A program made the translations under genes and the position numbers. Of a DNA stretch of 64,000 bases, positions 1 through 45,188 are shown in pieces. The notes under the pieces are model-generated. The model saw only the letters and a program-made list of their open reading frames with translations. It had not been told where the DNA came from and ran no database searches. Source of the DNA: Bugula neritina (lineage: Eukaryota; Animalia; Bryozoa); the NCBI GenBank assembly GCA_964035545.1, contig OZ037770.1, positions 15,242,642-15,306,641 of the forward strand, in the 5' to 3' direction. The first letter of the stretch is position 1, and each line of letters opens with the position of its first letter.

Positions 1-1081
1 TTGTATGATCACAACTTTGGGTTTTCCTGTCATGGCAGGAAAATTCTTCGGGGAGATCAAACTCAACAGATCATCCATGGAAACCTCGTCATCTGGTCCA
101 CCACATCCGCCAATCTTATCTTTCCTTCCATGACTCATTAAGACCAGAAAGAACATTTTGTATGACTCATGCTCCTGGAGGCGACTCTCTTGAATGATTG
201 CTTCTTTCATCTCCTGTAAAGATTTAAGTAAGTAGTGTTGGAAACTCAAGCTCATGCACTATATTGGTTTATAAAAACAATGGTCTCAGTCTCAACCTAA
301 AATAGCATTATACCGTAAAATACAAAATTTTTCACTTTTTTTAGTGTTGAAGGTTTTTAGTGTTTGTGAGTGCAATTACTTTAAGAATACTAAAATAGTA
401 TTATTGATGATCGTTCTTTCTAATTATCTACCAGACAATTGTTAAAGATCGCAGCAGCTTGTCAACAATGAAATATGCTTTAACCACAAAGAGCATGTGT
501 GTCATTGATTATATAAATTCCTTACTTATATAGTAATACGTAAAATGATGGTTATATAATAGTTTTGCTAAACAGAAGTGGTGTGGTGGTTCGTGGAACT
601 ACCAGCAGCACAACATGTAGGGTCGCGTAATTGACCCGGAACAATGGATAGCCAATTAGCGTATTCGATAGTTAGCAGCAATTATAGTTTCCTGCTGCTA
701 AGTCAGTCGAAGCTAGAGTGTCAAATAGATTAGATGTGTAAATTGTCTGAATATATTGTATCGTTTTTATAATGTATAATTGTGTGTAAAATATACTCGT
801 TCACTCGACTTATCCTGGTGCAGTTCTATAGCGAATAAGTAGACTCTCTGGATAGCATATCAACCCTAAATCTGGAAAACATAACAGTACTACATAAACA
901 ACCTTGTGCTCACCTCAGCAGTGTAGTCTTTGTGTTCTCCTGTGACGACAAAGTCCAGCTTACTCAGCATGTTCTTGACATTCTGAAAGTCAACTTCAGA
1001 ACCAACTCTGGTGTTGCTGGAACTATTAGAGATGATTAGTGCCCTCCCTCTGGGTGAAGACATGGGGTAAACTTGAGGCAT
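1..1081 (-). CDS. Caspase (peptidase C14A) p20 domain exons of the fusion gene (1081-914 and 213-1)
   Basis: MPQVYPMSSPRGRALIISNSSSNTRVGSEVDFQNVKNMLSKLDFVVTGEHKDYTAE|EMKEAIIQESRLQEHESYKMFFLVLMSHGRKDKIGGCGGPDDEVSMDDLLSLISPKNFPAMTGKPKVVIIQ. Catalytic His (SHG) is present; the QACxG cysteine would lie two codons beyond the window edge. Confidence 0.92.
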
Positions 1082-4000
1082 CTGCAATTTTAGAAAAAGT
1101 CAAATATTAGTCCTAAAGTCTTTCTCAAGTAGTTCAATTACACAAATTACCTACAACATATGACTTAGATTTACCATTCTAGCATCTACTTCTAAATCAT
1201 CTTCATCTAGTTTTCTCTTTCTTTTCCTAGAATAAAAATCTTTTGGTTCCATGATGATTTCAGCCGTGTTCTCATTCTCAGCCAGCCATCCTGCAATCTT
1301 TTTGATAGCTGTGCCTCGGGCAGTGTACTCGTTAGCTTCATCTACAATTCATAATCGCGATTCAGAAAAGATTTTCTAGCTGCATTTTATATTTTATAGC
1401 TGAAGTATTTGGAATTTAGTGGATTAATACAATTTAACTAGTACTACTACTACTGCTTAAATGTCCATCTTGTATGTCATATCATTACAATAAGAAACTT
1501 TGATATTGAAGAGGTATTAAAATTTGAAAGATATTATATGCATGAGTTGTTCAGCCAGAAACTCACATTTCTCCAGAAACTGGTACAGCTTTTCTTGATC
1601 TTCAAAGCTCAGATCTTGGCCTGAACATAAAGTTATGTATTTGTTATGCTAATGTTTTAATGACATGCCATTTATATATGCTGTTTTGTCATAATAATAG
1701 TATCTAGATGCTAATTCTGCTATACCCAATATAAATTCAAACAGTCTATGACAGGAATTTGATAAAAATACTAACACAATTTTCTATGCAGCTGTAAAGC
1801 TGCTGTTGTTGCACCAATCATGCATTGATTTCAATTCTAGAAAGTTGCACAGCTTCAATGCAAGGAAAACGAATGACAAGGTCTTCTCACGTAGAGAAAA
1901 TCATGACTCATCAAACAGGTCATCAGTAATATTGGTGCAACAAAGTTTAAAAAAGTTCCAAATTTTATGGCAATACTCACAAGGCCACACCAGGACACTC
2001 GGGACATCGCCAACTCCTGAAAAACATGTCACGCTGTAGAGCGGATCTGGGGAGAATGTCACACCTATAGACTCAGACAGAGAAATGTTCTCCATCAGAC
2101 TGTTTAGGAAACAAGCATTGCTGACTTCTTCTAGCTTGTGAGGATGAACCAGGAGACAATGAGGGCAACAGAACCTACATCGGCTGACTACAGAAGGACA
2201 AAGTTTCCGGAGTGTTTGAATCACAACCTTAACTGAGCGAAGAAGCCGTTTCCATGTGTTATGCATACTTTCTACATGAATTGAGCTCAATAATGTTATG
2301 TAATTATGGTTCCAGTCGTAAACAGCTTGAAGCTCCCACAAGTGGCCTTTCCGAATTGTCAGGCCATTGTGAAAAAGATTTAACGAGTTATCTGTATGAT
2401 GAAGCGTTTGTAATATAGATTGACCTAACGAATAATACATGTGTTTCAGCAGAGGGATATTATCAAAGAAGACATCTATGCGGAGTGATGGCTTTTCAGT
2501 AACCCAATCTTTGGAAGTCTTTGAGGGTAGCAAGGAGGGAATCACGTACTGCACTAAATTTTTATCTTTTTCAGCTCGGCTATCTTTCCTAATAATTAGT
2601 TCTAATACTATTTCCAACTCCTTCAAAAGTTCAATAGCCACTTCGGTTGGGAAATCAGATTCAGAGTTGATGATATGCTCAAGAAGCTGAACTGGCATCA
2701 CTCCTGTCTTTTGAAACATTTCAATTGATCTTCTTATCTTCCTGTCAAAAGTAGCTCCTTCATTGTCTGAGTCGCAGTAAATTGCTTCCAACATTTGTTC
2801 TGAATTAGGAGAGAAGAAAAGTTTTATTAACTTATCAACAATCTGCAGCCTATGAAAGACATGAGTAGAGAGCTTTGATCTGTTAGAAAACCACACCAAA
2901 AATCCAGCACGCTGAGCTACTTTTAATGCTTCTTCAACTTTACTCAGGCGAAATTCGGAAAATCTTTTCAGCAGAATTATGAGCTCAATACTAGTTGCAT
3001 GGCTGAAACTTTCATCGGTAACGAAGTTGACTATGTCTTGAGCAAGCAATGGAAGCTGGCAGGAAGCAGCTTGATTCACTCTTTGTTTGATGGCGCATGT
3101 CAATTCCAACGGCGGACTCATTTGCTTATTTAAAAGAAAGACACTGTCATCTGTAAACATGTGCTGCGAAGTGCTAGCACCAATAAAATTTTGCTCTAAG
3201 CTTGTGCAGCACTCTAGCAGTTTGTTTGCGTACATGGTGAATTCATTGTGACAAAATCTTCCTTTATTTGTCATAACCAGAATGGGCGCTATAGTCAGTT
3301 TACTTGATTGCCTCAAGAAAAACCAATATTTCAGCAAAACATGTTTAGCTGCTTCCTCATAACCTACCTGGAGAGATTGTTTATGGTACTGGCCGATGTC
3401 TACTACAAGAAGTGTTAAACATGAGTCATGGTGCCATAACTTTCTGTAGGCAGCATAAATGTCATCCGATATGTTGAACGCTCGAATTGGGCAACCGTTA
3501 ACTTCCCAGCGCTGCTCCTGAAAACATTCTTCTATGCCATCAAACAGCAGCCTGTTTTCACAAGCAAAACTTTGCCTTAGCAAGTTTATTACCTCTATTC
3601 TTTCTGAATTCTCGAGTCCCAATACAAAGATAGATGTGGTTACCGGCCTTTGACTAATGACGAGTCTTTCAAAGTGCTGTCGGATTCTCTCCCAACCATC
3701 AGAAGCTGACTGGTAAGGTGGCTCTTTGAGTTGGGGACACTCTCTGCAGTCCAGCTCTGTTAAACATGTTAGCTGCAGAATTTCTGAGCTTAAAGACTTC
3801 AATTGACTGTTGGCAGTGAGTACTAGTCGCTGTAATCTGGTCAGCTGGTACACAACTGGTGGTAAAACTTGACTGAACAGGTTATTCTGAAGTTGAAGAA
3901 CCTTGAGAGTGCCAGCACTAGCTTGTAAGCTGAAAGCAAACCGCATTTCTAAGTTTTAAAGCAAAATATCAGTTTTTGAAACCAGAAAAATTCATTAAAA

Positions 4001-6507
4001 TACCATGTTTTGATCATTGATCTCAAAACATTTTATATACATTCAGATGCACGTACTAATGTACACGCGTATACACGTGTATACTAGTAATTTTCATAAG
4101 TCTACCTGCTTGGCAATGTTTCAAGCTCGCAATTCTCTAAATACAACTCGGAAACTTGACTGAGCTTTTTGAATGCATGCTCTGGCAGTTCTTTCAGAGG
4201 ATTGCTCCCAAGGTGAAGGATCTTTAGACTTGTCAGATTAAACAAACTACAAATGTTTCAAAGAAATCATAATTAAAATTGCTAAAAGTGAATTGTAAAG
4301 AAGTAACAATGGACTCGGTTTCTGACACTGTCCTCTAGTGATAATGTTTAAATAGTAGGTGTTTTCAACTAGTAATTACTAAGGCTCAAAACTATAGTCA
4401 GATAGAGAAGGGAAAGCTTCAATCGGTTCAGACTGGTTGTAGCTTATAGTTAGAATTTGCTATATACTGTAATTTAGTTGATTATAGCTACTTCAAGCTA
4501 AACAAGATCCTATGTTGATTTTAAACCACAGCATGTGAGTATGCCCACAGTATGAAGGTAAACTTACCTCTCAGGTAGTGTAGTCATCCCGTTAGAAGTC
4601 AATTGCAGACTTTTAAGAGAGTTCAAATTTGAAAAGACTTGATGAGGCAAACCAGATGAGAAGTTATTGTTGCTCAATGAACAAAATTCTAAGAGATGTA
4701 ATGAAGATAAGCTAAAAATAAATTAACAGACACCATGTTTTATAGAGTCCTGCGCACTTCTGTTGTGAATTAAAGTCTTCAATTTTACTAAATTCAATTA
4801 AAAAAGTTTAAATTGAATATTAGATACTATATTATACTGGACAATTTTGTTGCTAGAGTAGTAATAAGAATAATGACCTTGATGGAAGGACACGGAGCTG
4901 GCAGCTATCTAAATATAGTTTCTTCAGCGACTTCATTGAAAGAAATATGTCATCTGGGAGACCAGAAGAGAATGAATTGTGTTTAACATCAAGCACTTCT
5001 AGTTGGCCGAGGGGACTGAAACTAAAACACAAATTGCTCAATTAGAAACGATTAAAACATTTAGTGACTTACTATTCGGGATTTGCATCAGTCATCATAA
5101 CCATAAGGAATTTATTATACAATTCTTTGGAAAAACCAACGCAACTTTTTCGAATTATTGGAACACAGAAGTTAACATGTACCTGTGAGGGAGCTCTGTT
5201 AAAGAGCAACCCTGCATGTTAAGCTTCTTCAACCCCTTTAAACACTGAAAGATTCTCTCCACAGAGTTTACTGACAAAACGTTTTTCTCCAAATTAAGTC
5301 TCTCCAAGAAGGAAAGCTCTAGCAGACTGTAAAGAATACAAAGAAAGGTTGCTATGCAAACAATCATACACAAATGGTAAAATCAGCAAGCTAAAAAAAA
5401 ATCGTAAGTTGTTTTCTGGCATTTGATACTGTGATAATTTAGTAAGCTATTTGATAATTTCTATGGCTAAAATGCAAGCTGGAGATTCAAACCGAAATGG
5501 GAGATGCATTTACGCTGAAGTTTAGGAAACTGTGTAAAGCTACAGACCTTGCCGGAAGCTCCATAAGTCCGCAATCATTCAGGTTAAGAGTTGTCAGACT
5601 TTTCAGACAGGATTTGAAGGTGTTTGGTGGAAGTCCAGCTGACAGATTGTTACTCTCTAAATCAATATTTTCTAAGCTCTTGAACTTCTGGAGTCTGAAA
5701 AGTTTAAAATCGGTAGGATTGTTATTGTCTATGGTCAATGCTAAATAACATAACTACGTTTTCATAGCTGAATTTACAGTGGAATAAAATGCATGCATCT
5801 TAAACGAAGTTTATCTTTCTGGGAATATCTCGCTGAATATATAGGACTGCATTAAATGTATCAACCTTGGTTAATTTCAAACCAACTAATGGTCTTTTCC
5901 TCTTTGAATAAAAAATTGAAATCTATTTAAGAGTAATTACTACACATTGTATGATAGTGATACATCTTTTTACTACTATATATAGCTACTCACAACCATT
6001 CAACATGAAAATAGTATTTGCTTGCAAGCAGGCACGCTCAACCGTTACACCATAGGGCAACTGGACAAACTTAGCACTATACAATATCAATTTACTACAG
6101 CTATAAAAATCTGCAAAAGCAAACTAGTTAATGAAATGATGTACCAAATTAGATCTAATAAATCCTGATTCATGAAAATCAAAAGTATCACAGAGGAGAT
6201 AACTTCAGAATTGAAGGGGAAACTGTTGTCATGTGATTAGAGATGGAGATTACCTTTTAAGGACGCCGACACTGGATATTCCTCTAACACAGATCTCTCT
6301 CACAGTCCTGGTGACGGCAGGAAACACCGGTATGTCACCCATAACCAGTATGTGTGTGATTTCATAGTTCTGTCCGTCTCCTTTCAAACTCTCTTTGACC
6401 TCTGACCTCGTGAGATTGCTGCATTTAGCCAAGTAGTTGGATATGTGAAGCACAGGCTCCGGCTCTCCGGTGTGTATGAACCAGATCTTGTAAACGTCTT
6501 CTTCCAT
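1..6507 (-). CDS. Multi-exon LRR-ROC(degenerate)-COR-caspase fusion protein (ROCO/MFHAS1-like with C-terminal caspase p20); 3' end outside window
   Basis: Phase-compatible GT-AG exons (minus): 6507-6254, 5694-5548, 5326-5183, 5021-4878, 4711-4568, 4246-4106, 3929-1981, 1620-1567, 1341-1175, 1081-914, 213-1 = 3525 nt = 1175 codons without a stop. LRRs (e.g. LENIDLESNNL, LKILHLGSNPL), pre-ROC LKEPPY..SDGWERIRQHF, COR motifs (GFLVWF..L.THVF, YVIPSLLP, CPHC), caspase motifs YPMSSPRGRALII, RVGSEVD, LMSHG, GKPKVVIIQ. Start at ATG 6507 is provisional (in-frame TGA 9 codons upstream). Confidence 0.85.
1981..3929 (-). CDS. Large exon: last LRRs + degenerate ROC + COR domain
   Basis: Core of ORF 1901..3946; acceptor tttcag|C at 3929 and donor CCT T|GTGAGT at 1981; ROCO-type motif order. 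Confidence 0.8.
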
Positions 6508-6647
6508 TTCACAGCTTTCAATATAATGTATTCATAGTTGAACTTCTCTGAAGAATTAGTAAGAGATGCAGAAAAGAGGAGTGCAAACACAGCAAGTAAG
6601 TGATCGCTCTAACTTATAAATATGTACTTTTAAAGCAAAGCATACAT

Positions 6648-9600
6648 CTCTCTTGCAGTCAGTCGATACGACTATGACTGTTTTATGGATTAAGCTTAGA
6701 TTTGGTTGCAGCTCTCCACGCAGCTCTGTTGTCAGCTGTTTGCTGCCATGAACTCAAGTTTATTGCTCTCCATTTCATATTCCTCTTAGCAACATCTTTA
6801 AGTCTGAGTCTAGGTCGCCCTGTATTTCTTTTACCCTCTTTCAGCTGAGAGTAGAGCAATTGTCTTGGTAGCCGGCTATGTTCCATCCTGTGCACATGGC
6901 CTAGCCATCTCAAGTTCTTTTCTATAAGGATGTCGGCCATGCTTGGCAAATTGGCACGTCTTAATATTTCTTCATTCGTAACTTTGTCATACCATTTTAC
7001 AGCCATTATGTCTCTCAGTTGTCTCATCATGAAAGCGCTTAGCTTCTTCACCTGTGTCCTGTATATTGTCCATGTTTCTGCTCCATACAGCAGGCTTGAG
7101 AGCACCACCGCTCTGTAGACTTTACACTTTACCCTGATGGATACGTGTCTGTTGTTCCAGAGTCTCTGCTGCAGCTTACCGTAAGCCGCACTTGCTTTGC
7201 CTAATCTGTTCCGTAGCTCTTTATCTATTTTTGCCGTACAGGAAACAGTGCTTCCTAGATAAGTAAAGTCTGAGGCAAGTACAACTGGTTTTTGATCTAT
7301 CATGACAACTTCAGGTTCAGGTGGAGGGTGGATGAGTTTGATTGGCTGGTACATGCATTCTGTCTTTTTTATGTTGATTTTTAAGCTAAACTGAGATGCT
7401 GCTTTTGCAAAGTTGTTCACTGGCACCTGCATATCTGCAGCGCAATGTGCCACCAAAGCACTGTCATCAGCAAACAACATCTCTCTGACTAGGTGTTTGG
7501 TAGTACGGGTCTTAGACTTGAACTGAGCCACATCAAAGAGGTCAGCCCCATGTCGAGTTTGAATATAAATCCCTTCATTTACATTTTGAAATGCCACCTC
7601 AAGCATAGCGGTCAAGTATAATGAAAATAGTGTTGGCGCAAGAACACACCCCTGCTTGACACCATTGGTTACTGCAAACTCATTTGAAGCATCTCTACCT
7701 TGCACTACCTTGGCTTGCATGCCTGCATGAAGAGCTTTTATCAGGTTGGTGACCTTCTCAGTTAAGCCAAACTTCTTCAGTACCCTCCAGAGGCCATCTC
7801 TTGATACTGTATCAAAGGCTTTTGTAAAGTCTATAAATACAGCATACAGCTCCATGTTTTGTTCAGCACATTTTTCTTGAATTTGGCGAAAGCTAAATAT
7901 CATATCAATGGTGCTCCTGCTGTTTCGAAAGCCACACTGTGTTTCTGGAAGTATTCCTGGAGTTATATTTACATTGATTTTGTTGAGGATGATACGGGCC
8001 ATAATCTTTCCAGCTATAGACAAAAGCGAGATTCCTCTATAATTACCACAGTCCTTCCTACTACCCTTTTTAAAAATGGGCACAATGTTCGCATTTTTCC
8101 AGTTCTGTGGCATCTTCTCATTACTCCATATATAAGCAATCAGATCATATAGTCTCTCTTTAAGCCTGATTCCACCGTACTTTCACACCTCAGCTGGAAT
8201 GCCACATTCTCCAGGAGATTTATTCTCCTTGGTTGCATCTATAGCATCCAGAAGCTCATCAAAACTTGGCATATCATCTAGGCTTAAATTGGGTGGCATA
8301 TTTGTGAGACTATTGAGAGCTTCCTGATCCACTTCCCCTGGTACATTCAGCAACAGGTCAAAATGTTGGGCGAACCTTTTTAAGGTATCATTCTTTGCTG
8401 TAAGTACTGTTTTACCACTTTGGTCCAGCAATTGGGCGATTCCCCTGTTCTGTGGCCCATAGACTTCTCTAAGGCCATTGTAAAATGCCTTCATGTTGTT
8501 TTTATCAGCTGCCTGTTGGAGTGATTCTGCTTTTTCCTCCCACCATTGAGACTTTTTCTCTCGAGTGTATTTTTGCAGCTTGCTGCGTGCTTGCGCTAAT
8601 CGGTCAGTGCTACTTCTTGTTCTTCTCTGTAGTGCTTTTGATTTAGCCTTATTTCGTTCATTAAGTAATGCATTCAGCTTTGCATCATTGTCATCAAACC
8701 AATCTTGATGCTTTCTTTCTGCTCTACCTAAGACTTTGGTAGCTGTGTTGAAGGCTGAGATCTTTAACCTTCCCCATCTCTCTTCTAAGGTTACACCATC
8801 ATCATCTCTATAGTCCATTGCCTTATCCATCTGTTTCTGAAACTCCTGTAGCATATCCTGATTTTGTAGTTTCCCCACATTGAGTTTGCATGCGGAGTTC
8901 CCTCTTGTCTTGTTCTTTGCTTTCCTTAATGCAAATGCTAGCTTGGACCTGATCATGGTATGGTCAGTTGAGCAATCAGCACCTCTCATTGCCCTAGTAT
9001 CTAGCACATCATTCTGGTCTTTCCGTCTTGTAATCACATAATCGAGGAGGTGCCAATGCTGAGAACGTGGGTGCATCCAGGTGACTTTATGATGCTGCCT
9101 GTGCTTAAATACTGTGTTCGTGATAACAAGCTGATATTCAGAACAGAATGCCAGTAGCAGCTCTCCATTTGTGTTACATTTTCCAATTCCTTGATTACCA
9201 ATAACGCCTGGCCAATTTTGAGCTTCACACCCTACTCTTGCATTAAAGTCACCGGCTATAATCAGTTTGTCTGTGATGGATATATTCTTTACTGTTTCTC
9301 TCAATTTATTGTAAAACTCCTCCTTCTTTTCTTCCGTATTTGTCATTGTTGGAGCGTAAGCACTCACTATTGTCACATAATGATTCTTTTTCAGTGGAAG
9401 TCTCATGCTTATAATTCTATCACTTATTGCTGTTGGTTCTTGCTCTAGATAAGGCATAATTGTATTCCTGATAGCAAACCCCACCCCTGATTCTCTTCTT
9501 TCTTCCTCGCCTTTTCCACTCCAAAAGAATGTGTACCCATTATCAACAAGGCTATCATTCAGGGCAAGCCGAGTTTCACACAAAGCTGCAATGTCGATAT

Positions 9601-10010
9601 CATATCGGCCCAGCTCTTTTGCAACAAGTGCTGTCTGCCTCTCTGGTCTTTTTGAATTATTTCGGTCTAGTAATGTTCTAACATTCCATTCTGCTAGTCT
9701 CAGAACTTTTCTGAACTTTCCATTGCGTCCTAGCTGACTTTTCACTGGCTGCCGGAGCGGGAGCAGACCAGCGCGAACCTTGTTAACCCGGGCGACGTTC
9801 GTGCCGGTATCAAATACTGTTTCCATTGTCATAGTCCATAAAACTGCATGCGAAGTGGTTAAGTGAACTTGGCTTTCGCGTTACCATGTTCTCTCTCTCG
9901 GCAGGGTGTAAATGGGATCTAGCGGCAAGAACAGGTCAAGACATGCTAGCATTTACAACCTGCTGCAGTGGCTGGCCGTTATACACGTTTGTCTGTACAC
10001 GCCCTTGAGG
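6648..10010 (-). mobile_element. Full-length RTE-clade (BovB-like) non-LTR retrotransposon
   Basis: Single APE-RT reading frame 9832-6683; 8-bp direct repeat GCATACAT at 6640-6647 and 10011-10018 (putative TSD); short GA-repeat 3' tail; ~3.36 kb as typical of RTE. Confidence 0.9.
6683..9832 (-). pseudogene. RTE ORF (apurinic endonuclease + reverse transcriptase) interrupted by one in-frame TGA
   Basis: APE motifs WNVRTL, ALCETR, SAYAPT, GDFNARVG, LDYV, STDH; RT motifs YRGISLL, QCGFR, FIDFTKAFDTV, GVKQGCVLAPTLF, FADD, YLGS. ORFs 8183..9832 and 6683..8113 are in the same frame, separated by TGA (8183-8185, likely from TGG) plus 23 open codons. Confidence 0.92.
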
Positions 10011-11327
10011 GCATACATATTGGCACAGAATATATTATATCTTTATTATAACTCTGCAACTCAAGGGTTAGTCATTTGCATTTAGAAAGACATTAAAAAA
10101 GGTTTGTGTAACTAGAAAACAGCTTAAGATAAATAGATGAATAAGCAACACAAATACTGAGTAAAAATGTATGTACATTTCCTTAAACTTAAAGTAACCA
10201 GACATGTATTTGAACCTACCACTATGCTAGACTTTGCACTACGTACTGGTATTATAGACTTGAATCAATAGTCGAACTGAGTGTTGACAGTAAATATTTA
10301 GAAACTTTCAAACTGCAGACTTATAGATATGTTGCTACGGCTAAATGTACAGCACTCTAATGTACATCACTTTAACACCCCTTAAAGTTACTATAATATA
10401 ATGTTTAGGCTAACTTCTATGTAAAAATATAGTATTGTGATAAAGTAATGTAGCAACAGTAAGTACTAAAATTAACAAGATTTATTGGTCACTCAACTAA
10501 ACTGATAAACTTAGACTTCATATAGCAGAGTGTCTGACAAATTAAGTCATAAAAACAGAGAAGATTGTCTGTCAGCCAGATATTGAGCTGCTAGATAAAA
10601 TATTCACCTGCAGTGTAATAAGGCTGCCCATAACTCGCTGTAAATCCCGAGTAGTCACTAGTATTGAACCCATTTACTAACTGAATATTCAATTGATTAA
10701 ATATGATAATTCAATATAACTATTGTGCAGGGCTTTTGAACAACAAAGACTGTTTGCATTTCTATACAAAGTTGAAGCCTGCGTTTTAATTAGATATAAC
10801 AGGGTACTATAGTATTTCGACCCACAGCGCTGTTATAATATAAAATAGCACACAGGCACATTTGTATTTAGCTTTATATACTAGCTGTTTGATTTGGCTT
10901 CTTTATTTACTCAAACACCTTTTGAATGCATTTTACTGCTATAAAATATTACTTTCAAATTCTTACAAAGCAAAGAAATACAAAAAATAGCAGTTTACAA
11001 TAACTATAATATAAAATGTTTTACAATAAAGTCTACAAGAAACAATAAAATATATTACATATCATGTTTAATATTATAAATTGCATATTATGTTAAGGAA
11101 TTAGGTTTTACCTTATTTTCTCACCCTTATCATGGAAGTTCACAGTATAGTTGTAAGTATATTTTCTAGTCAATTGAGAACATGGAGAAAGTTTAACACG
11201 ACTTTTAAACAGTAGCTTGAGATCATAAAATAAAAACATAAATTAATATCTTCTTATATGATAATCATTGAGCAGTGTAGCACAGAAAATATAAACAATA
11301 TAATAGTTATATAATGCTATAGAATGG

Positions 11328-17582: not shown

Positions 17583-20136
17583 ATGAAGTACCAAGTTTTC
17601 CTGCTACTAGCATCGGTAGCTGTCAACCACGGAAATCCTCTGACAACCTCGTAAGTTGGTTTATAAATAATAATTATTTAACTATTAATTATTAATTATG
17701 CTATGTATTGCATATTGTTAGCAATTATCGATAATGATGTACATTAGCTGTCACACTGTCAAGTGAATATATCTCAGTGTACTCTGCAGTTATTCTAGAC
17801 TGTTTAAAATCCTAATATGTTTTTAATATGCATATTTTTGCTATTTGTTGGCTAATTTCTAAATGACTATGTAAGAGTTATGTTGGTGATGCAGCAGTGA
17901 TAGATGCTGTATAGTAGGTTAAAAAATCATTAGTTCAATTAAGTGATAGAATTATATAATAGAACATGTTGCGTATCATAATAATATTATGTATATGGCA
18001 ATGTAATGACAAATGTATTAATCCGATATATGATAGACTTATATATCCTAATATTGGAGTTCATATAATAACATTATGTTAGCATAAAATGATGTTATAG
18101 TCTTTTTATTATCGTTAAGCTATTTATATAACCTCTATCTCAGAAAAATAATTTCTGAAAAATAAAAAAACTCGAAAAAATGATTTTTCGAGAAACAATC
18201 TGTCTTTTAACGATTTATAGTTGGCCATATTTGCACTTCCTTTTGATTGTAGAATTACCAGCCCTCAGCCTACAACGAAATATTGGCAAGAATGTCCACC
18301 TTGGGTGAGAGTTCTGATTAAAGACTCCGGAATTGATATTCAGTGTGCTTCAGCAGCTACCACTCCTCTGACACCTGCAGCTACCACTCCTCTGACACCC
18401 GCAGGTACCACCCCTCTGACACCTGCAGCTACCACACCTCTGACACCTGCAGCTACCACTCCTCTGACACCTGCAGCTACCACCCCTCTGACACCTGCAG
18501 CTACCACTCCTCTGACACCTGCAGCTACCACTCCTGTGACACCTGCAGCTACCACCCCACTGACACCTGCAGCTACCACACCACTGACACCCGGAACAAC
18601 CACACCTCCAGCTGTAGGGGATGTGACGGAAACACCAGCAGCAGTAAAGGAAGTAGAGATGATTGGTACCTCGAAGACGAGAGTAATGGAAACAGAACCT
18701 CCAGCCATACTTCCTCTGCAGTTCCCAGGAACAGACATGGGGATGGCTGCCGAGTCAGTGAATATGCCATCAGTTAGCCAATCAGCATTGGAGCCTGCAT
18801 CAAATCCCCAAATGGTGGCATCAAGTATATCTGATGTTACTTTGACCTTAAGTACGACATTGGCACCCGGACCTCCAAATGCACCAGCTGCACCAGCTGC
18901 ACCAGCTGCACCAGCTGCACCAGCTGCACCAGCTGCACCAGAATTACCATCTGCACCAGTTTCAACATCTGCACCAGGTTCAACATCTGCACCAGTTCCA
19001 ACATCTGCACCAGTTTCAACGTCTGCACCAGGTTCAACATCTGCACCAGTTTCGACATCTGCACCAGAATTATCATCTGCCCCTGAAGTAACATCTGCAT
19101 TAGTTTCAACATCTGCACCAGTTTCAACATCTGCACCAGTTTCAATGTCTGCACCAGGTTCAACATCTGCACCAGTTTCAACATCTGCACCAGTTTCAAC
19201 ATCTGCACCGGTTTCAACATCTGCACCAGAATTACCATCTGCACCAGTTTCAACACCTGCCCCTGAAGTAACATCTGCACCAGGTTTAACATCTGCACCC
19301 GAAGTAACATCTGCACCAGTTTCAACGTCTGCACCAGGTTCAACATCTGCACCAGTTTCATCATCTGCACCAGGTTCAACACCTGCACCAGTTCCAACAT
19401 CTGCACCAGTTTCCACACCTGCACCAGGTTCAACATCTGCACCAGGTTCAACATCTGCACCAGAATTACCATCCGCACCAGGTTCAACATCTGCACCAGG
19501 TTCAACAGCTGCACCAGTTTCAACATCTACACCAGTTTCAACATCTGCACCAGTTTCAACATCTGCACCGGTTTCAACATCTGCACCAGGTTCAACACCT
19601 GCACCAGTTCCAACATCTGCACCAGTTTCAACGTCTGCACCAGGTTCAACATCTGCACCAGTTTCAACATCTGCAACAGTTTCAACATCTGCGCCAGGTT
19701 CAACATCTGCACCAGGTTCAACATCTGCACCTGAAGTAACATCTGCACCAGTTTCAACATCTGCACCAGGTTCAACATCTGCAAACCTGCTATCAAAACC
19801 ATTCATCTTCGGGAAGACACCTCAATTTCTGCAACATCCAAACTGTCCAGGCGTTAAAGGTAAGTTTTGCCTTGCATATCTACACCAAACCACTTGTCCT
19901 TGGGCATCCTAAATAGTTATTTATAAGTTTCCAATGATCTGCTTTCACATTACACATCAGTTGCTTACTTTTATGTTGAACTTGCAGTGCTGCTTGGGTC
20001 AAAGTGTAAAGTCTTCAACCGACAAAGATGTGGTCCCTTCATGCTATACGACCTCTTCTACTGTGTCTGCAACTTTATGAGTCGAGTGAATGCGGCTACG
20101 TGCAGCTCCCAACCTCTGAGTCGTCTACAACCATGA
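17583..20136 (+). CDS. Secreted mucin-like protein A (~607 aa) with C-terminal 6-Cys chitin-binding-like module
   Basis: Exons 17583-17650 (signal peptide [17 protein letters not shown], phase 2), 18253-19859 (P/T/S/A repeats, phase 1), 19988-20136; module [44 protein letters not shown]. Confidence 0.88.
18353..19780 (+). repeat. Coding tandem repeats of mucin A: 24-bp (AATTPLTP)x10, 9-bp (APA), 18-bp ([12 protein letters not shown])
   Basis: Directly visible in DNA and in ORF 18221..19912. Confidence 0.95.
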
Positions 20137-25942: not shown

Positions 25943-28900
25943 ATGGACTCTCTGAAAATACTCATTACGATTTCTGTGCTCTGTACTTGCAGTGGACACC
26001 CTATTACCGGAGGGCAACATGCTCACCAAACGTATGTATTCTAACCTGTATTCACTACTCTCTTGTGGTTAAGTTATTTTTAAAACAATAAAATAATAAA
26101 TTTTGTTCAGTAAAATAATCAGTGAAATAGGTAACAGCTAGTAGCATATTACAAGCATTTTTTGTATAACTAGCTAGCTTTTCATTTCTTTCTTTTATTT
26201 ACTAATTTTTTTTATACTTTCTTAAAGTATGGCAAAATACAAAGGTAGTTGTCAGGATTTAGCATGGGTTAATTATGTTTCACGTGGTCTAGCTGTAAAC
26301 ACCACAATGCACGTTAAATTTATTTTCAAGTTTGCTAAAAGCAACCGCATAAAAACAATTAACATAGATAGTATTATTTTAATTATGTGCAGAAATCATG
26401 TGTAATAATAGAATGTCAGTTAGCACCATATGCAAATTATGTTTTATACAATAGGTATCTAATAATATATTATTTTACTACCAAGATAAGTTGTGAGGTG
26501 TCACAATTTATTTTAAATACATATGCAAAAGTTAACAATTGATGGGTTCAGTTATCAATGTTAAAATTGGTAAAATTTGCTCTTACAGATCGTATATGCA
26601 ATCTTAAATAGAAACAGAAATGAAATAAGCTGCTGTAAAACAGATAGAGATACTTAAAATTGTCTTTTAATTTAGGATAGCATAGAAATTTAAAAGTTAT
26701 GTATTTTAAAATTTAATATGATTGATATTTCTATAAAATTAATTTTGTTTTTATAGCCCCACTGCTACCAACACCCATGTGAATGAAGTTAACAAGGTGG
26801 ACTGCCCGGGTCCAGTAAGACAGCTGTTTACCACGTTGGACATCCTTTACATGTGTAAGCCTGAAGTGGCTATCCAACCACACTCCTTACCTCCATCTCT
26901 ACCAGGTGAACCCACTTCAGTTCAGCTAAACTCTGTCAAACCAGTCAGTGGTGGGTTGGAGCCAGGAGTGGTTGCAGCCACAGCCCCCCAGGAGCCACTT
27001 CCAGGAAATCCAGTAGAACAACCAACACCTGTAGCTGCTAAGGCTGCAACACAGCCAACAACTGTAGCTGCTAAGGCTGCAACACAGCCAACAACTGTAG
27101 CTGCTAATGCTGTAACAGAGCCAACAACTGTAGCTGGTAACGCTCAAACACAACCCACAACTGTAGCTGCTAATGCTGCAATACAGCCAACAACTGTAGC
27201 TGCTAATGCTGCAACAGAGCCAACAACTGTAGCTGCAAATCTACCAACAGAGCCAACAACTGTAGCTGCTAATGCTGCAACAGAGCCAACAACTGTAGCT
27301 GCAAATCTACCAACAGAGCCAACAACTGTAGCTGCTAATGCTCAAACACAACCCACAACTGTAGCTGCAAATCTACCAACAAAGCCAACAACTGTAGTTG
27401 CAAATGTACCAACAGAACCACCAACTGTAGCTGCTAATGTACCAACACAACCCACAACTGTAGCTGCTAATGTACCAACACAACCCACAACTGTAGCTGC
27501 AAATCTACCAACAGAGCCAACAACTGTAGCTGCTAATGCTCAAACACAACCCACAACTGTAGCTGCTAATGTACATGTTCAGTCCACAGCTCATCCTACA
27601 AATATACCAGCTCAACCAACAGTACTGCCAGTTCAACCAGCAGCTAGCCATTTGGATCCAGCTCAGACACATACAGCACCAGGAGATCCAGGAGTTCTTG
27701 CCATAAAGATTATGGAAGGACAGTTTTTTGGTACCACCGCTGCATCTGGCAACCTGCCAAAACCAGTAGACGCACCATCCAAGCCAAACAATAATGCTCC
27801 ATCGCAAAAAGCTAACCAGTCTAACAAGGGAGCATCCGCTAAGTCAGGGCAGACCATGGCAACCCAAGAAACTATCAAAGCTAACAAAGAATGCCCATTT
27901 TACATTTTACCATTGTATCAGCACTTAGGGATTGCTAACTTATGCCCAACAGGCGCTAGTCCAAAAACTACTACCTCTGGTGTCTCAAAATCTGCTACAC
28001 TTACTACAGCTTCTCCAAGTAGTTCAACAACGACGCTATCATCAGCTCCACCTGCGCCAACAACTGGACAAACCACAGCTGTTTCATCCCCAACAGCAAC
28101 TGGACCAACTACAGCTGTTCCATCTCCAACAACAACTGGGCCAACCACAGCTGTTCCATCCCCAACAGCAACTGGACCGACTACAGCTGTTCCATCTCCA
28201 ACAACAACTGGGCCAACCACAGCTGTCCCATCTCCAACAACAACTGGGCCAACCACAGCTGTCCCATCTCCAACAACAACTGGGCCAACCACAGCTGTCC
28301 CATCTCCAACAACAACTGGGCCAACCACAGCTGTTCCATCCCCAACAGCAACTGGACCAACTACAGCTGTTCCATCTCCAACAACAACTGGGCCAACCAC
28401 AGCTGTTTCATCCCCAACAGCAACTGGACCAACTACAGCTGTTCCATCTCCAACAACAACTGGGCCAACTACAGCTGTCCCATCTCCAACAACAACTGGA
28501 CCAACCACAGCTGTTCCATCTCCAACAACAACTGGGCCAACCACAGCCGTACCTTCTTCAACAACAACTGGGCCAACCACAGCTGTTCCATCTCCAACAA
28601 CAACTGGGCCAACCACAACTGTTCCATCTCCAACAACAACTGGGCCAACCACAGCTGTTCCATCTCCAACAACAACTGGGCCAACCACAGCCGTACCTTC
28701 TCCAACAACAACTGGACCAACCACAGCTGTTCCATCTCCAACAACTACTGGGCCAACCACAGCTGTTCCATCTTCAACAACAACAGGACCAACTACAGCT
28801 GTTTCATTTGCACCAACAGATATGACGACCACACCTGAACCATCCACCATGTTCCCAATACTTGCTTTAAAATTTTCGGGCTTGGATCCATCAATGGGAA

Positions 28901-30131
28901 TAACAAAGACTCATTCTAATCCAGTTGCACCTGCTGATCCAACAACAGCAGCAGCTACTACAGCAGCAGCTACTACAGCAGCAGGCACTACAGTAACAGG
29001 CACTACTGCAGCAGCTACTACAGTAACAGCTACAACAGCAGCAGGGACTACCACTACTGCAGCAGCTACTACAGTGACAGGCACTACAGTGGCAGGTACT
29101 ACAGTAACAGGTTCTACAGTAACAGGCACTACAGTCACAGGAACCACAGCAGCTGGAACCACGGCAGCTGGAACCACAGCAGCAGGAACCACGGCAGCTG
29201 GAACCACTGCAGCAGCCACTACTGTAACAGGCACTACAGTAACAGGCACTACAGTAACAGGCACTACCTCCGCAGGAACCACAGCAGCTGGAACCACGGC
29301 AGCTGGAACCACGGCAGCTGGAACCACAGTAGCAGGAACCACAGCAGCTGGAACTACAGCAGCTGGAACCACGGCAGCTGAAACCACGGCAGCTGGAACC
29401 ACAGTAGCTGGAACCACAGCAGCTGGAACCACAGTCACAGGAACCACAGCAGCTGGAACCACGGCAGCTGGAACCACAGCAGCTGGAACCACTGCAGCAG
29501 CCACTACAGTAACAGGCACTACAGTAACAGGCACTACAGTAACAGGCACTACCTCAGCAGGAACCACAGCAGCTGGAACCACAGCAGCTGGAACCACGGC
29601 AGCTGGAACCACCGCAGCTGGAACCACAGCAGCTGGAACCACTGCAGCTGGAACCACAGCAGCTGGAACCACAATAGCTGGAACCACGGCAGCAGGAACC
29701 ACAGTCACAGGAACCACAGCAGCTGGAACCACGGCAGCTGGAACCACGGCAGCTGGAACCACGGCAGCTGGAACAAACAAGGCGTCATTGAAGAAGGCAA
29801 CTCCTCCCATGAAGTTCCACAAGAATGTTTGTAACGTTCAAGGTTAGTTTTACTATAATTTACTATTTTCAATATTCTTACATTTTATTGATGTGCAGCT
29901 TTTGTTACGCAAGGCACTATTTTATTGCAAAATGAAGCAGGTTTTACCTGCTTTTATCTATTCAATCTTCTGTTGACAGTTCCGGCTGGCCATGACTGCA
30001 AGAAGTTCAACAATAAGCGATGTCCACCACGGACTAGGTACGACGTCAGACTTTGCATCTGCAATCACGAACTCAAAGTTGACCCACAAACCTGCACAAG
30101 TTATTCTCATAATAGTAAGTATCACATCTGA
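25943..30131 (+). CDS. Secreted mucin-like protein B (~1108 aa) with C-terminal 6-Cys chitin-binding-like module
   Basis: Exons 25943-26031 (signal MDSLKILITISVLCTCSG, phase 2), 26757-29842 (phase 1), 29980-30131; module CNVQVPAGHDCKKFNNKRCPPRTRYDVRLCICNHELKVDPQTC. A GTAAGT donor at 30115 may instead splice to a short last exon (30539-30561, NNLLPRL*). Confidence 0.88.
27019..29772 (+). repeat. Coding tandem repeats of mucin B: 33-bp (PTTVAANxxTE/Q), 36-bp (PSPTTTGPTTAV), 15-bp (GTTAA/GTTVT)
   Basis: Three separate arrays at ~27019-27570, ~28060-28805 and ~28945-29772. Confidence 0.95.
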
Positions 30132-42617: not shown

Positions 42618-45188
42618 ATGGCACAGTGGCAGGCAGTGATCGTATGCATTCTACTAACCTTGGAGGGGTGAGCAGTCATTTTTTATGTTGATGTTTTGAT
42701 TTTCTTTTCAAATATTTAAAATTTGAGTTAAAAGTTGAAAAAACATAAAATCATTTGCATGCAGCTGAACTAAGCATATAAAGGAATATTTATTATTGCG
42801 ATGTTTATTAATATAGGGGTAGGTGTTTCCCATTTCGAAAATAGTCATATATAGGCAACTGCTTTTTATTGAAAAAAATTTCAAACTGTTATGGGAATTG
42901 CTGAAAAATATCTTTAAAAAACTAAACTAAAATTATTAACTAGACATTTCAACAATCAAATTTATTTATTGCTTAGAATAAAAACACAGAACTCACCAAC
43001 TCCAAACTCTCCTCAGTCATCCAACCATCAGGGAGAGGCTTTAGCAGCAATTTTGAATGCATTTCTAAACTCCAAACCTAATCAGACTCAACCTACGGCA
43101 AACTCACCTCCTCAAAAAGCTGTAGAGAAATCATGGGTAGATGTCCTGCAGGACACCATGGTGTCGGCTTTGAGACAGCCCCCCAGCCCTGCTGCTCAAC
43201 CTTTACTACCAGGAGATCCACCTGCACCAACTTCTTCCACAGCGCCAGGAAGTCCAACTGCATCAGCTGCTCCCACAACTCTAGCCAATCCAACTGCACC
43301 AGCTGCTCCCACTGCTCCAGGAAATCCAACTGCACCAGCTGCTCCCACAGCTCCAGCAGATCCAACTGCACCAGCCGCTCCCACAACTCCAGGAAATCCA
43401 ACTGCACCAGCTGCTCCCACAACTCCAGCAGATCCAACTGCACCAGCTGCTCCCACAACTCCAGGAAATCCAACTGCACCAGCTGCTCCCACAACTCCAG
43501 CAGATCCAACTGCACCAGCTGCTCCCACAACTCCAGGAAATCCAACTGCACCAGCTGCTCCCACAGCTCCAGCAGATCCAACTGCACCAGCCGCTCCCAC
43601 AACTCCAGGAAATCCAACTGCACCAGCTGCTCCCACAACTCCAGCAGATCCAACTGCACCAGCTGCTCCCACAGTACCAAGAGATCTAACTGCACCAGCT
43701 GCTCCCACAACTCCAGCAGATCCAACTGCACCAGCTGCTCTCACAACTCCAGCAGATCCAGCTGCACCAGCTTCCACAGCAGTCTCAAAAGATCCGACAC
43801 TGAAGTCTAGCACAGCAGCACCAGTAAATTCAGCAACTCCAGTTGCACCCTCTGTGTCTCCTACCGTTACAACAAACCTTAATAATCCACAGACTTCTGC
43901 ATCTGGTGCAAAACCCCCAGCTTCAACATCAACTACACCACTGGTGACGTCAGACTCTGTACCCCAACTTCTGCACACTACAACAGCTGCTGCCAGTCAA
44001 GGCACAACGTTTCAACCTTTACCTTCTAGCCCAGCCTCTCCAACATCTCAATCTCCAGCAACACCACTAACAGTCTCTCCCAGCACAAGCAATAGACAAT
44101 TACGTCAACATTTGCAAAACATCCTTCAAGCTCATGGAATAAACTTACCAAAAGTATCATCAATAATGCAAGTGCCGCCAGCGCAGAGTGTTACTCCAAT
44201 CTCTAACCCAGTGTCAAAGAAAGCCACGACAGTAGCGGCTTTAGAAGGAGTAAACGTACCAACAACAGCACACACTCCAACTACTGTTCACAGTTCACCT
44301 CAAGTAACTGTGATTACTGGTACAGTAGTGGGGACAAAAGCATTGCCTGCAGCAACTACTGCGTCCCAACCTGTAGCTGTAGCAGCAACTTTAAGTTCCA
44401 CACAACCTACTGCTGGAATGACTACAGAGTCACAAGCTGCAGCAAAGATGAAACCGGCAGTTACAAATGCTCCCACACTGGCAGGACTGTCTGAACTTGC
44501 CAACCGTGTTCCAACTCAAAGTGCAAAGACCACAGCGTCAGCAACAGCTGCACAAGTTCATTCTACTGTAGCAGTAGCAACTTTGAGACTAACAACCCCT
44601 GCTGCTCCCTCAGGCACTGCACCTTCAGTGCCAGTCAACCAGCCAACACAGTCCTCTGTGGCATCTCTGCTCAGCATCCCTTCCAAACCTTCTGTGAAGT
44701 TCTCAGTGCAGAACAGATGTGGTGTGATAGGTAAACAGTATTATAATATACTAGTATTATGATAATTTTTTGTGAGCAAAATTTGCCAGCAATTTAAAAT
44801 AAAGATGATAGAATATTACTTTATGTAAATTAAGCATTACTATTTAAAATTAATTGCTAAAGAAACATAAAAAATAAATAAATAATAATTCATAAAGATA
44901 TAAATTATTGAATTAATGATGAAGATGAAAGGTAATGCAAATGAAAATTATAGACAATTGGAACTACTGAATTCTTTCTCAAGTGCTCTTTGTATTTCAG
45001 CGCTATGTATTATGTAATATGCATTATTGCTTATACACTAAAACTTCCATAATTTATTTTCAGTTACTCCTGTAAACAAATGTGCAACCTTTAATGAACA
45101 ACTTTGCCCACCCGACACAGCATATGACCTGACGTTTTGTGTGTGTAATCACATATCTAAGGTGAACACGCAGACTTGCACAAGTTAA
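42618..45188 (+). CDS. Secreted mucin-like protein D (~642 aa) with C-terminal 6-Cys chitin-binding-like module
   Basis: Exons 42618-42667 (MAQWQAVIVCILLTLEG, phase 2), 42977-44730 (phase 1), 45064-45188; module CGVIVTPVNKCATFNEQLCPPDTAYDLTFCVCNHISKVNTQTC. Confidence 0.88.
43240..43770 (+). repeat. Coding 36-bp tandem repeat of mucin D (PTAPAAPTTPGN / PTAPAAPTTPAD alternating, 72-bp higher-order unit)
   Basis: Directly visible in ORF 42969..44762. Confidence 0.95.

What the first reader, a model, noticed from the sequence alone, without database searches (positions are those of the whole stretch)
1..6507. Single-polypeptide LRR-ROC-COR-caspase: a candidate self-contained immune sensor-executioner
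Seen: eleven exons splice phase-compatibly into one stop-free 1175-codon frame running N-terminal domain -> ~13 LRRs -> ROC-like -> COR (with CPHC) -> linker -> caspase p20 (R of RVGSEVD, SHG, GKPK..IIQ). No CARD, DED or death domain is recognisable. Known: COR domains dimerise ROCO proteins; initiator caspases are activated by induced proximity, normally through CARD/DED adaptors on apoptosome, inflammasome or DISC platforms; characterised animal ROCO proteins (LRRK1/2, DAPK1, MFHAS1) have no caspase domain. Inference: LRR ligand binding could drive COR-mediated dimerisation that directly activates the fused caspase, collapsing receptor, platform and protease into one gene. I know of no characterised animal protein with this architecture but cannot search to confirm novelty.
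Basis: partly seen in the sequence, partly recalled or inferred. Interest (0 to 1): 0.92.

Follow-up and report, generated by a model that had tools for sequence, protein, structure and literature searches.

The report
Bryozoan Roco-caspase with dead GTPase
This moss-animal gene really joins a leucine-rich-repeat surface, an LRRK2-type Roc-COR module and a complete cell-death protease in one protein; this copy has lost its GTP-binding motifs and sits next to a sister gene that kept them but lost the protease's catalytic residues, which suggests the two work as a complementary pair.

Summary
Confirmed. All 11 exons are GT-AG and phase-compatible (1175 codons). Beyond the window lie the catalytic Cys (QSCSG) and a full p10. 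RNA contigs from four studies splice COR to caspase, and an independent Bugula neritina model (KAF6038145.1, 1341 aa) has the same structure. Foldseek matches LRRK1, C. tepidum Roco and LRRK2, then caspases.

The gene is one of at least 88 such loci here, in a genome with almost no NACHT hits. The architecture also occurs in Watersipora and amphioxus. It is not unprecedented: bacterial LRR-AP-GTPase-COR-caspase (Kaur 2021) and amphioxus 'LRRs-caspase' (Zhang 2008) were noted in silico. The scan found this family before on other DNA of this genome.

What this copy adds: it is a pseudo-GTPase (G1 and G3 lost; 28 of 28 paralogs keep them) with an intact caspase. Its head-to-tail neighbour 1.2 kb downstream is the reverse: intact ROC, His and Cys lost. 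Both are under purifying selection, have one-to-one orthologs in another bryozoan, and share a gene-converted p20 exon. Their LRRs are conserved, whereas the expanded paralogs' exposed LRR residues diversify. Best reading: the executioner half of a Roco heterodimer (caspase-8/cFLIP-like). Mechanism untested.

The parts
6254..6507 (-). Exon 1: ATG at 6507, 84-aa N-terminal region of unknown family, probably the N-cap of the LRR solenoid (inference)
   Evidence: no Pfam or Atlas hit; homologous exon in the neighbour gene, E 8e-13; 90% identical in the other assembly
4106..5694 (-). Exons 2-6 (5694-5548, 5326-5183, 5021-4878, 4711-4568, 4246-4106): symmetric phase-2 exons of 141-147 nt, two LRRs each
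   Evidence: dN/dS 0.16 against the other B. neritina assembly
3660..3929 (-). Start of exon 7: last three LRRs and capping helix
3060..3659 (-). ROC domain, pseudo-GTPase. G1 at 3619-3596 reads GLENSERI instead of GxxxAGKT; G3 at 3475-3461 reads NISDD instead of DxGG. Domain borders approximate.
   Evidence: alignment with 28 paralogs, all of which keep G1 and G3; fold kept; dN/dS 0.54; also degenerate in the ortholog on L041
1981..3059 (-). COR-A and COR-B, ending with the CxHC motif (CPHC at 2167-2156); donor at 1981
   Evidence: intron 7 spliced in 4 of 4 runs
1175..1620 (-). Exons 8 (1620-1567) and 9 (1341-1175): COR-to-caspase linker, a two-helix hairpin plus a basic/acidic stretch; not a death fold
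914..1081 (-). Exon 10: start of caspase p20 with the S1 Arg at 1009-1007; about 90% identical in DNA to the same exon of the neighbour gene (gene conversion)
580..904 (.). Solo-LTR-like repeat in intron 10, absent from the other B. neritina assembly
   Evidence: (40 scored copies at 74-98%, many in pairs 7.2 kb apart)
1..213 (-). Exon 11: p20 with catalytic His at 132-130. It runs 13 nt past the window edge and holds the catalytic Cys (QSCSG; Cys at G000:C6:15242638-636). Then follow exon 12 (acidic intersubunit linker, C6:15241586-433), exon 13 (15241214-120), exon 14 (15240661-551, p10 with S1 Arg in 'AFR') and exon 15 (15234929-783, stop).
6648..10010 (-). LINE retrotransposon (endonuclease and RT, one in-frame stop at 8183-8185) inserted about 140 bp upstream of the ATG; absent from the other assembly; not part of the gene

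Best explanation
A real B. neritina gene of about 1345 aa in a large bryozoan LRR-ROC-COR-caspase family. The family most likely works as NLR-like intracellular receptors: the LRR solenoid recognises a ligand, the Roc-COR module controls the dimer state, and the directly fused caspase is activated by proximity, with no CARD or DED adaptor. This member is specialised. Its ROC is dead and its caspase is intact, while the head-to-tail neighbour has an intact ROC and a dead caspase. Most likely they heterodimerise through COR: the neighbour supplies the GTP/GDP switch and a cFLIP-like pseudo-caspase surface, and this protein supplies the Asp-specific protease. The pair would be a conserved core or helper rather than a variable sensor. 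Shown: gene structure, splicing, folds, motif states, selection, synteny between two B. neritina assemblies, and orthologs of both genes in another bryozoan. Inferred: ligand sensing, dimerisation, heterodimer partner, protease activity, cell death.
For: Splicing in 4 of 4 runs and an independent 1341-aa model. Roc-COR fold and caspase fold with residues matching caspase-3 R64, H121, Q161, C163 and R207. At least 88 family loci (union); all 19 ten-kb paralog loci fetched carry caspase exons downstream of the ROC-COR exon. One weak NACHT match and no NB-ARC match in the genome. Between recent paralogs, exposed LRR codons have pooled dN 0.45 and dN/dS 1.4 against 0.06 and 0.23 for ROC-COR. Window copy lacks G1 and G3. 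Neighbour has intact G1, G3 and G4 but SQG and QCLAN at the dyad, in both assemblies. The two are 1158 and 1183 bp apart in the two assemblies and are sisters in the caspase tree (94/93). Purifying selection: caspase 0.11 here; neighbour ROC 0.12, COR 0.14, pseudo-caspase exons 10-11 about 0.2. One-to-one orthologs of both, 38-39% identical, occur in one other bryozoan sample. Exposed LRR residues of the pair are not hypervariable (4 of 60 and 5 of 70 changed).
Against: No biochemical data for any member. Tandem position and sister status also follow from a simple tandem duplication. Adjacency in the third species is not shown (short contigs). Pseudo-caspases occur elsewhere in the family (4 of 22 sampled) and a Watersipora member also has a broken P-loop with an intact dyad (P0044), so such losses recur. 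ROC and COR of this copy are under relaxed constraint (0.54, 0.40). The converted exon 10 is not the caspase dimer-interface strand, and it inflates the sister grouping in the caspase tree. The motif QSCSG departs from QACxG. The dN/dS values are simple Nei-Gojobori counts with no formal test, and one paralog pair was not one-to-one (without it: 0.74 against 0.13 non-synonymous changes per codon). The NACHT search is intron-blind and gives a lower bound.
Confidence: 0.42

Rival explanations
1. Stand-alone single-chain sensor-executioner: ligand binding to the LRRs rearranges or dimerises COR and activates the caspase as a homodimer; the dead ROC is only a scaffold and the neighbour is irrelevant or a loose dominant-negative regulator.
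For: Complete architecture and intact catalytic residues; 18 of 22 sampled family members keep the dyad; artificial dimerisation activates caspases (cited in PMC2575513); COR fold kept.
Against: No GTP switch here. A nucleotide-free Roco is constitutively dimeric in the bacterial model (PMC5714945), which would leave an intact caspase poorly restrained. LRRs are not diversifying. The complementary neighbour is conserved.
Confidence: 0.25
2. Shared downstream helper or guard for the whole family: this conserved pseudo-GTPase pairs with many variable GTPase-active paralogs (as NRC helper NLRs do) or monitors a host protein, and is not tied to the neighbour.
For: Conserved LRRs, deep branch and long retention; variable paralogs show a sensor-like signature and some have lost their own catalytic dyad.
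Against: COR is only 20-24% identical to the expanded paralogs; most paralogs keep their own His and Cys and would not need a helper.
Confidence: 0.15
3. Non-immune role: a developmental or housekeeping protease switch (for example polypide degeneration and brown-body recycling, metamorphosis, or symbiont control), with the pair conserved for that reason.
For: Expressed in all four RNA runs from four studies; strong purifying selection on LRRs and caspase. Regular polypide regression in bryozoans is my own knowledge, not tested here.
Against: Family-wide expansion, clustering and exposed-residue diversification point to conflict-driven evolution; relatives swap immune effector domains at the same position.
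Confidence: 0.14
4. Decaying duplicate or annotation artefact: ROC loss is pseudogenisation, or the LRR-ROC-COR and caspase parts are separate genes.
For: Exon 7 reads on to a stop at 1901 if intron 7 is retained; one intron-7-containing contig in run X4 (depth 14.9 against 110.5 spliced); relaxed ROC constraint.
Against: Spliced joints in four studies; open frame and overall dN/dS 0.27 at dS 0.16; ortholog with a degenerate ROC at 39% identity in another species; the same fusion in Watersipora RefSeq models.
Confidence: 0.04

Closest known systems
Bacterial LRR + AP-GTPase (Roc) + COR + effector conflict proteins (Kaur et al. 2021, PMC8195603; e.g. OQX07365.1, LRR+AP-GTPase+COR+CASPASE)
   Same: Same domain order and same proposed logic (LRR sensor, GTPase switch, variable C-terminal effector including caspase); predicted, not tested.
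   Different: Here an animal multi-exon gene with a metazoan p20/p10 caspase, at least 88 copies all apparently ending in caspase, and a pseudo-GTPase/pseudo-caspase pair.
Amphioxus 'LRRs-caspase' shortcut proteins (Zhang et al. 2008, PMC2575513); e.g. XP_002614028.1 and about 12 Branchiostoma LRR-Roc-COR-C14 proteins found here
   Same: LRR-Roc-COR-caspase in one chain; proposed direct link from recognition to apoptosis.
   Different: That paper's text does not mention Roc or a GTPase, and I could not match its gene IDs. The amphioxus caspase has QACRG, the bryozoan one mostly [QE]ACSG. In amphioxus the caspase alternates with GT4, OTU or Death domains on near-identical scaffolds. Independent fusion is likely but not proven (caspase tree AU p 0.043; ROC-COR AU p 0.43).
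MFHAS1/MASL1-type LRR-ROC-COR proteins and invertebrate relatives with C-terminal CARD (Lingula), Death (Batillaria) or TIR (Aplysia, PMC9334734); brown-algal LRR-ROCO candidate receptors (PMC11378527)
   Same: LRR-Roc-COR core; lineage-specific expansion; symmetric LRR exons and diversifying exposed residues, as in brown algae.
   Different: The effector slot holds the protease itself, not an adaptor; LRR exons carry two repeats each.
LRRK1/LRRK2 and Chlorobium tepidum Roco
   Same: Top structural matches of exon 7.
   Different: No kinase or WD40 domain; this copy lacks G1 and G3.
Caspase-8/cFLIP heterodimer; paired or sensor-helper NLRs (from my own knowledge)
   Same: Active caspase beside a tandem pseudo-caspase paralog; division of labour between linked genes.
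   Different: No DED or NACHT; proximity would come from COR; here both partners are half-dead in reciprocal domains. Analogy only.

Membership tests
ROCO proteins | ROC domain directly followed by COR | tested here: met
   Foldseek full-length match to LRRK1, C. tepidum Roco and 3dpu; Roc in 28 of 29 and COR-A in 27 of 29 aligned members
ROCO proteins (active GTPase) | G1 GxxxxGK[ST], G3 DxxG, G4 [T/N]HxD | tested here: not met
   Window copy: GLENSERI, NISDD, TNKG; all 28 paralogs keep G1 and G3. A ROCO by fold and descent, but a pseudo-GTPase.
ROCO proteins | COR-mediated dimerisation and nucleotide-dependent monomer-dimer cycle | not testable with these tools
   Only single chains can be folded
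Caspases (C14A) | His-Cys dyad (SHG; QxCxG) | tested here: met
   SHG at 135-127; QSCSG just past the window edge
Caspases (C14A) | p20 plus p10 with caspase fold | tested here: met
   PF00656 E 8e-38 over profile positions 1-229 for the ortholog P0160; Foldseek caspase-9, -11, -3 at E about 1e-17
Caspases (C14A) | Asp-specific S1 pocket (caspase-3 R64, Q161, R207) | tested here: met
   Aligned residue for residue with caspase-3
Caspases (C14A) | Proteolytic activity | not testable with these tools
   No assay
Canonical initiator caspases (caspase-2, -8, -9, -1 types) | CARD, DED or death prodomain | tested here: not met
   No Pfam hit in the linker or N-terminus; two-helix hairpin only. The UniRef name 'CASP8' for the ortholog is not justified.
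NLR receptors | STAND (NACHT or NB-ARC) NTPase | tested here: not met
   The central module is Roc-COR. Not an NLR; the family may work like one.
Variable immune sensors | Diversifying selection on exposed LRR residues | tested here: not met
   This gene: 4 of 60 exposed against 16 of 254 other residues changed, LRR dN/dS 0.16. Seen in the expanded paralogs: dN/dS 1.4.
cFLIP-like pseudo-caspase partner (neighbour gene) | Caspase fold without the catalytic dyad, maintained by selection | tested here: met
   SQG and QCLAN in both assemblies; PF00656 E 2e-21; dN/dS about 0.2 in exons 10-11
cFLIP-like pseudo-caspase partner (neighbour gene) | Heterodimerises with and regulates the active caspase | not testable with these tools
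   Inference only

The most novel reading that the evidence does not exclude
Cheilostome bryozoans replaced NLR/inflammasome-type receptors with about 90 one-chain Roco-caspases, and this locus encodes an obligate heterodimer of two reciprocal pseudo-enzymes: one chain brings the GTP switch and a dead caspase, the other a dead GTPase and the protease, so the switch controls the protease in trans.
Probability: 0.3. Interest if true: 0.86.

Novelty: new variant of a known kind. Interest (0 to 1): 0.7.

Why it matters
How the Roc-COR cycle controls a fused effector is an open question for LRRK2. A Roco with a caspase output gives a simple read-out, and a natural pair that splits GTPase and effector between two chains would test directly whether the switch acts in trans across the dimer. 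For immunity, a family of about 90 copies with diversifying LRR faces, in a genome nearly devoid of NACHT hits, would be an animal alternative to NLR inflammasomes that parallels predicted bacterial systems. B. neritina is a tractable species with a known bacterial symbiont (own knowledge).

Tried and rejected
Pfam on exon 7 alone gave no Roc or COR hit; paralog profiles and folding were needed. My first exon-3 borders were wrong and were corrected. One search failed on a frame slip. The N-terminal 84 aa found nothing in Pfam or the Atlas. A hidden death fold in the linker was rejected. The AU test (p 1e-75) was invalid because two Watersipora fragments were left outside the tested clade; redone. 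The neighbour LRR count had an offset error; redone. The pooled 'nb casp' value is invalid (exons 14-15 mapped to the wrong gene). The search for stand-alone donor caspases returned only Watersipora fragments and weak caspase-4/11-like hits, so the donor family is unresolved. Huang et al. 2008 was not retrievable under the id I tried. Zhang 2008 gene IDs were not readable. The joined spliced model was neither built nor searched; full-length work used the database protein P0160.
Full report
OBSERVATION. Eleven minus-strand exons from 6507 to the window edge have AG/GT ends, matching phases and no stops (exon 3 corrected to 5326-5183 and read open), 3525 nt in all. The window is G000:C6:15242642-15306641 of a 216-Mb genome. 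Past the edge, exon 11 continues to QSCSG, so the catalytic Cys is present. An acidic linker exon and three p10 exons follow, the last behind a 4.3-kb LTR element.

SPLICING. Contigs of four RNA runs from four studies, roughly 93% identical to this assembly, skip introns 7 to 13. Single contigs span exons 7-8-9-10, and others span exons 10 to 14. Exon 9 is 18 nt shorter in those animals, in frame. One weak contig retains intron 7 (depth 14.9 against 110.5). Introns 1-6 and 14 were outside the stretch laid. They are supported by an independent gene model from another Bugula neritina assembly, KAF6038145.1 (1341 aa), which has the same exons through to the same C-terminus. The organism is therefore B. 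neritina or a cryptic sibling (inference from these matches and the genome size).

DOMAINS. There are 13 LRRs. Exon 7 has no Pfam Roc or COR hit by itself, but 28 of 29 aligned family members hit Roc and 27 hit COR-A. The AlphaFold model (pLDDT 74) matches LRRK1, C. tepidum LRR-Roc-COR and LRRK2 over its length. The caspase matches PF00656 nearly end to end, folds like caspase-9, -11 and -3, and keeps the residues of caspase-3 R64, H121, Q161, C163 and R207. The COR-caspase linker is a two-helix hairpin, not a death fold.

FAMILY. The union of three genome searches gives at least 88 loci with the ROC-COR exon, clustered on C1 and C6. All 19 ten-kb loci fetched have caspase exons downstream in the same order, and most show LRR exons upstream. 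Of 22 sampled genes, 18 keep His and Cys and 4 do not. The genome gave one weak NACHT match, no NB-ARC match and four CARD matches; these intron-blind counts are lower bounds. Between recent paralogs, exposed LRR codons evolve far faster than ROC-COR (pooled dN 0.45, dN/dS 1.4, against 0.06 and 0.23; one pair was not one-to-one, and the contrast holds without it). No formal selection test was run.

OTHER TAXA. Watersipora subatra RefSeq holds at least nine long proteins with this caspase, most with LRRs, two shown to span the whole architecture. Branchiostoma species hold about 12 LRR-Roc-COR-caspase proteins, beside siblings ending in GT4, OTU or Death. Lingula siblings end in CARD and a Batillaria one in a weak Death match. 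In the ROC-COR tree bryozoan and amphioxus sequences form separate clades, and amphioxus caspase-bearing members are interleaved with the other effectors. One origin of the fusion is weakly rejected by the caspase tree (AU p 0.043) and not by ROC-COR (p 0.43), so independent fusion is likely but unproven.

WHAT IS SPECIAL ABOUT THIS COPY. It is the only one of 29 aligned B. neritina members whose G1 and G3 motifs are destroyed. Its best match in the genome lies head-to-tail 1158 bp downstream. That neighbour has intact G1, G3 and G4, but Gln for the catalytic His and Leu for the catalytic Cys. The pair, the spacing (1183 bp) and both defects are the same in the other assembly, where the neighbour is modelled as a 1348-aa protein, KAF6038146.1. 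At dS of about 0.16-0.27 both are under purifying selection: window gene caspase 0.11, LRR 0.16, COR 0.40, ROC 0.54; neighbour LRR 0.07, ROC 0.12, COR 0.14, pseudo-caspase exons about 0.2. One further bryozoan sample holds a one-to-one ortholog of each at 38-39% identity, the first again with a degenerate ROC; its caspase exons and linkage are not on the short contigs. Exon 10 is shared by conversion: the paralogs differ at 8 to 16 of 156 nt, the same range as the orthologs (10 to 14), while exon 11 is about 60% identical between paralogs and 94-96% between orthologs. Exposed LRR residues of the pair are not hypervariable.

MECHANISM. Known: initiator caspases are activated by dimerisation (own knowledge), and the C. 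tepidum Roco is dimeric without nucleotide or with GDP and monomeric with GTP (PMC5714945). Inferred: a Roco that cannot bind GTP would be dimer-prone, and with an intact caspase it needs another restraint. The neighbour offers both a working switch and a cFLIP-like dead caspase. I put a COR-mediated heterodimer with the switch acting in trans at 0.42, a stand-alone homodimer at 0.25, a family-wide helper at 0.15, a developmental role at 0.14 and an artefact at 0.04. None of this is shown biochemically.

PRIOR ART AND VERDICT. Kaur et al. 2021 list bacterial LRR+AP-GTPase+COR proteins with at least 24 effectors including caspase, and a sponge AP-GTPase+COR+DED+TRADD-N+caspase. Zhang et al. 2008 proposed amphioxus 'LRRs-caspase' proteins as shortcuts from recognition to apoptosis, without mentioning Roc. 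Brown-algal LRR-ROCOs are candidate receptors with shuffled LRR exons. Nine searches of an open-access library found no description of the bryozoan family and no experiment on any Roco-caspase. Earlier notes of this scan report the same family elsewhere in this genome; none returned by my search described this reciprocal pair. Verdict: real, a new variant of a known (predicted) kind, interest 0.70.

Noticed in passing
L005 484-227 and L006 9932-1340, minus strand (G000:C6 about 15224500-15233625): Tandem neighbour gene: LRR-ROC-COR with intact GTPase motifs and a pseudo-caspase; shares a gene-converted p20 exon with the window gene.
   Followed up: yes
G000 unplaced contigs C66, C101, C110, C230, C160, C42, C204, C307 and others: Rab/Ras-like genes with in-frame TAA/TAG and almost no TGA, the pattern of the ciliate genetic code; these small contigs are probably ciliate contamination of the assembly.
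   Followed up: no
L005 2919-7246 (last intron of the gene): 4.3-kb LTR retroelement with matching LTR ends and a 5-bp target duplication; one 1031-aa ORF (gag, protease, integrase) followed by an RNase H end, with no RT seen (Gmr1-like order by my reading); absent from the other assembly. Observed only.
   Followed up: partly
window 6648-10010 (-) and L040 about 6400-10050: A LINE sits just upstream of the ATG in this assembly; the other assembly lacks it but carries a related LINE (66-71% DNA identity) in intron 1 in the opposite orientation.
   Followed up: partly
window 580-904: Solo-LTR-like repeat of a family whose copies often occur in pairs 7.2 kb apart.
   Followed up: partly
L039 1150-1930 (intron 11): RNA contigs of 280-890 nt lie inside intron 11 in all four runs; repeat-derived or a separate transcript.
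   Followed up: no
P0194 (ENA, 916 aa): An LRRC8/pannexin-like TM domain + LRR + complete caspase fusion, organism unknown; a channel-caspase architecture worth its own look.
   Followed up: partly
P0162-P0193 (Branchiostoma): Amphioxus LRR-Roc-COR scaffolds with exchangeable C-terminal caspase, GT4 glycosyltransferase, OTU or Death domains, paralleling the bacterial effector swap.
   Followed up: partly
window 18221-19909, 26743-29844, 42918-44759 (+): Long low-complexity, Thr/Pro-rich repetitive ORFs (mucin-like).
   Followed up: no
window 6535-6518 (-): Five-codon upstream ORF ending 11 nt before the main ATG.
   Followed up: no
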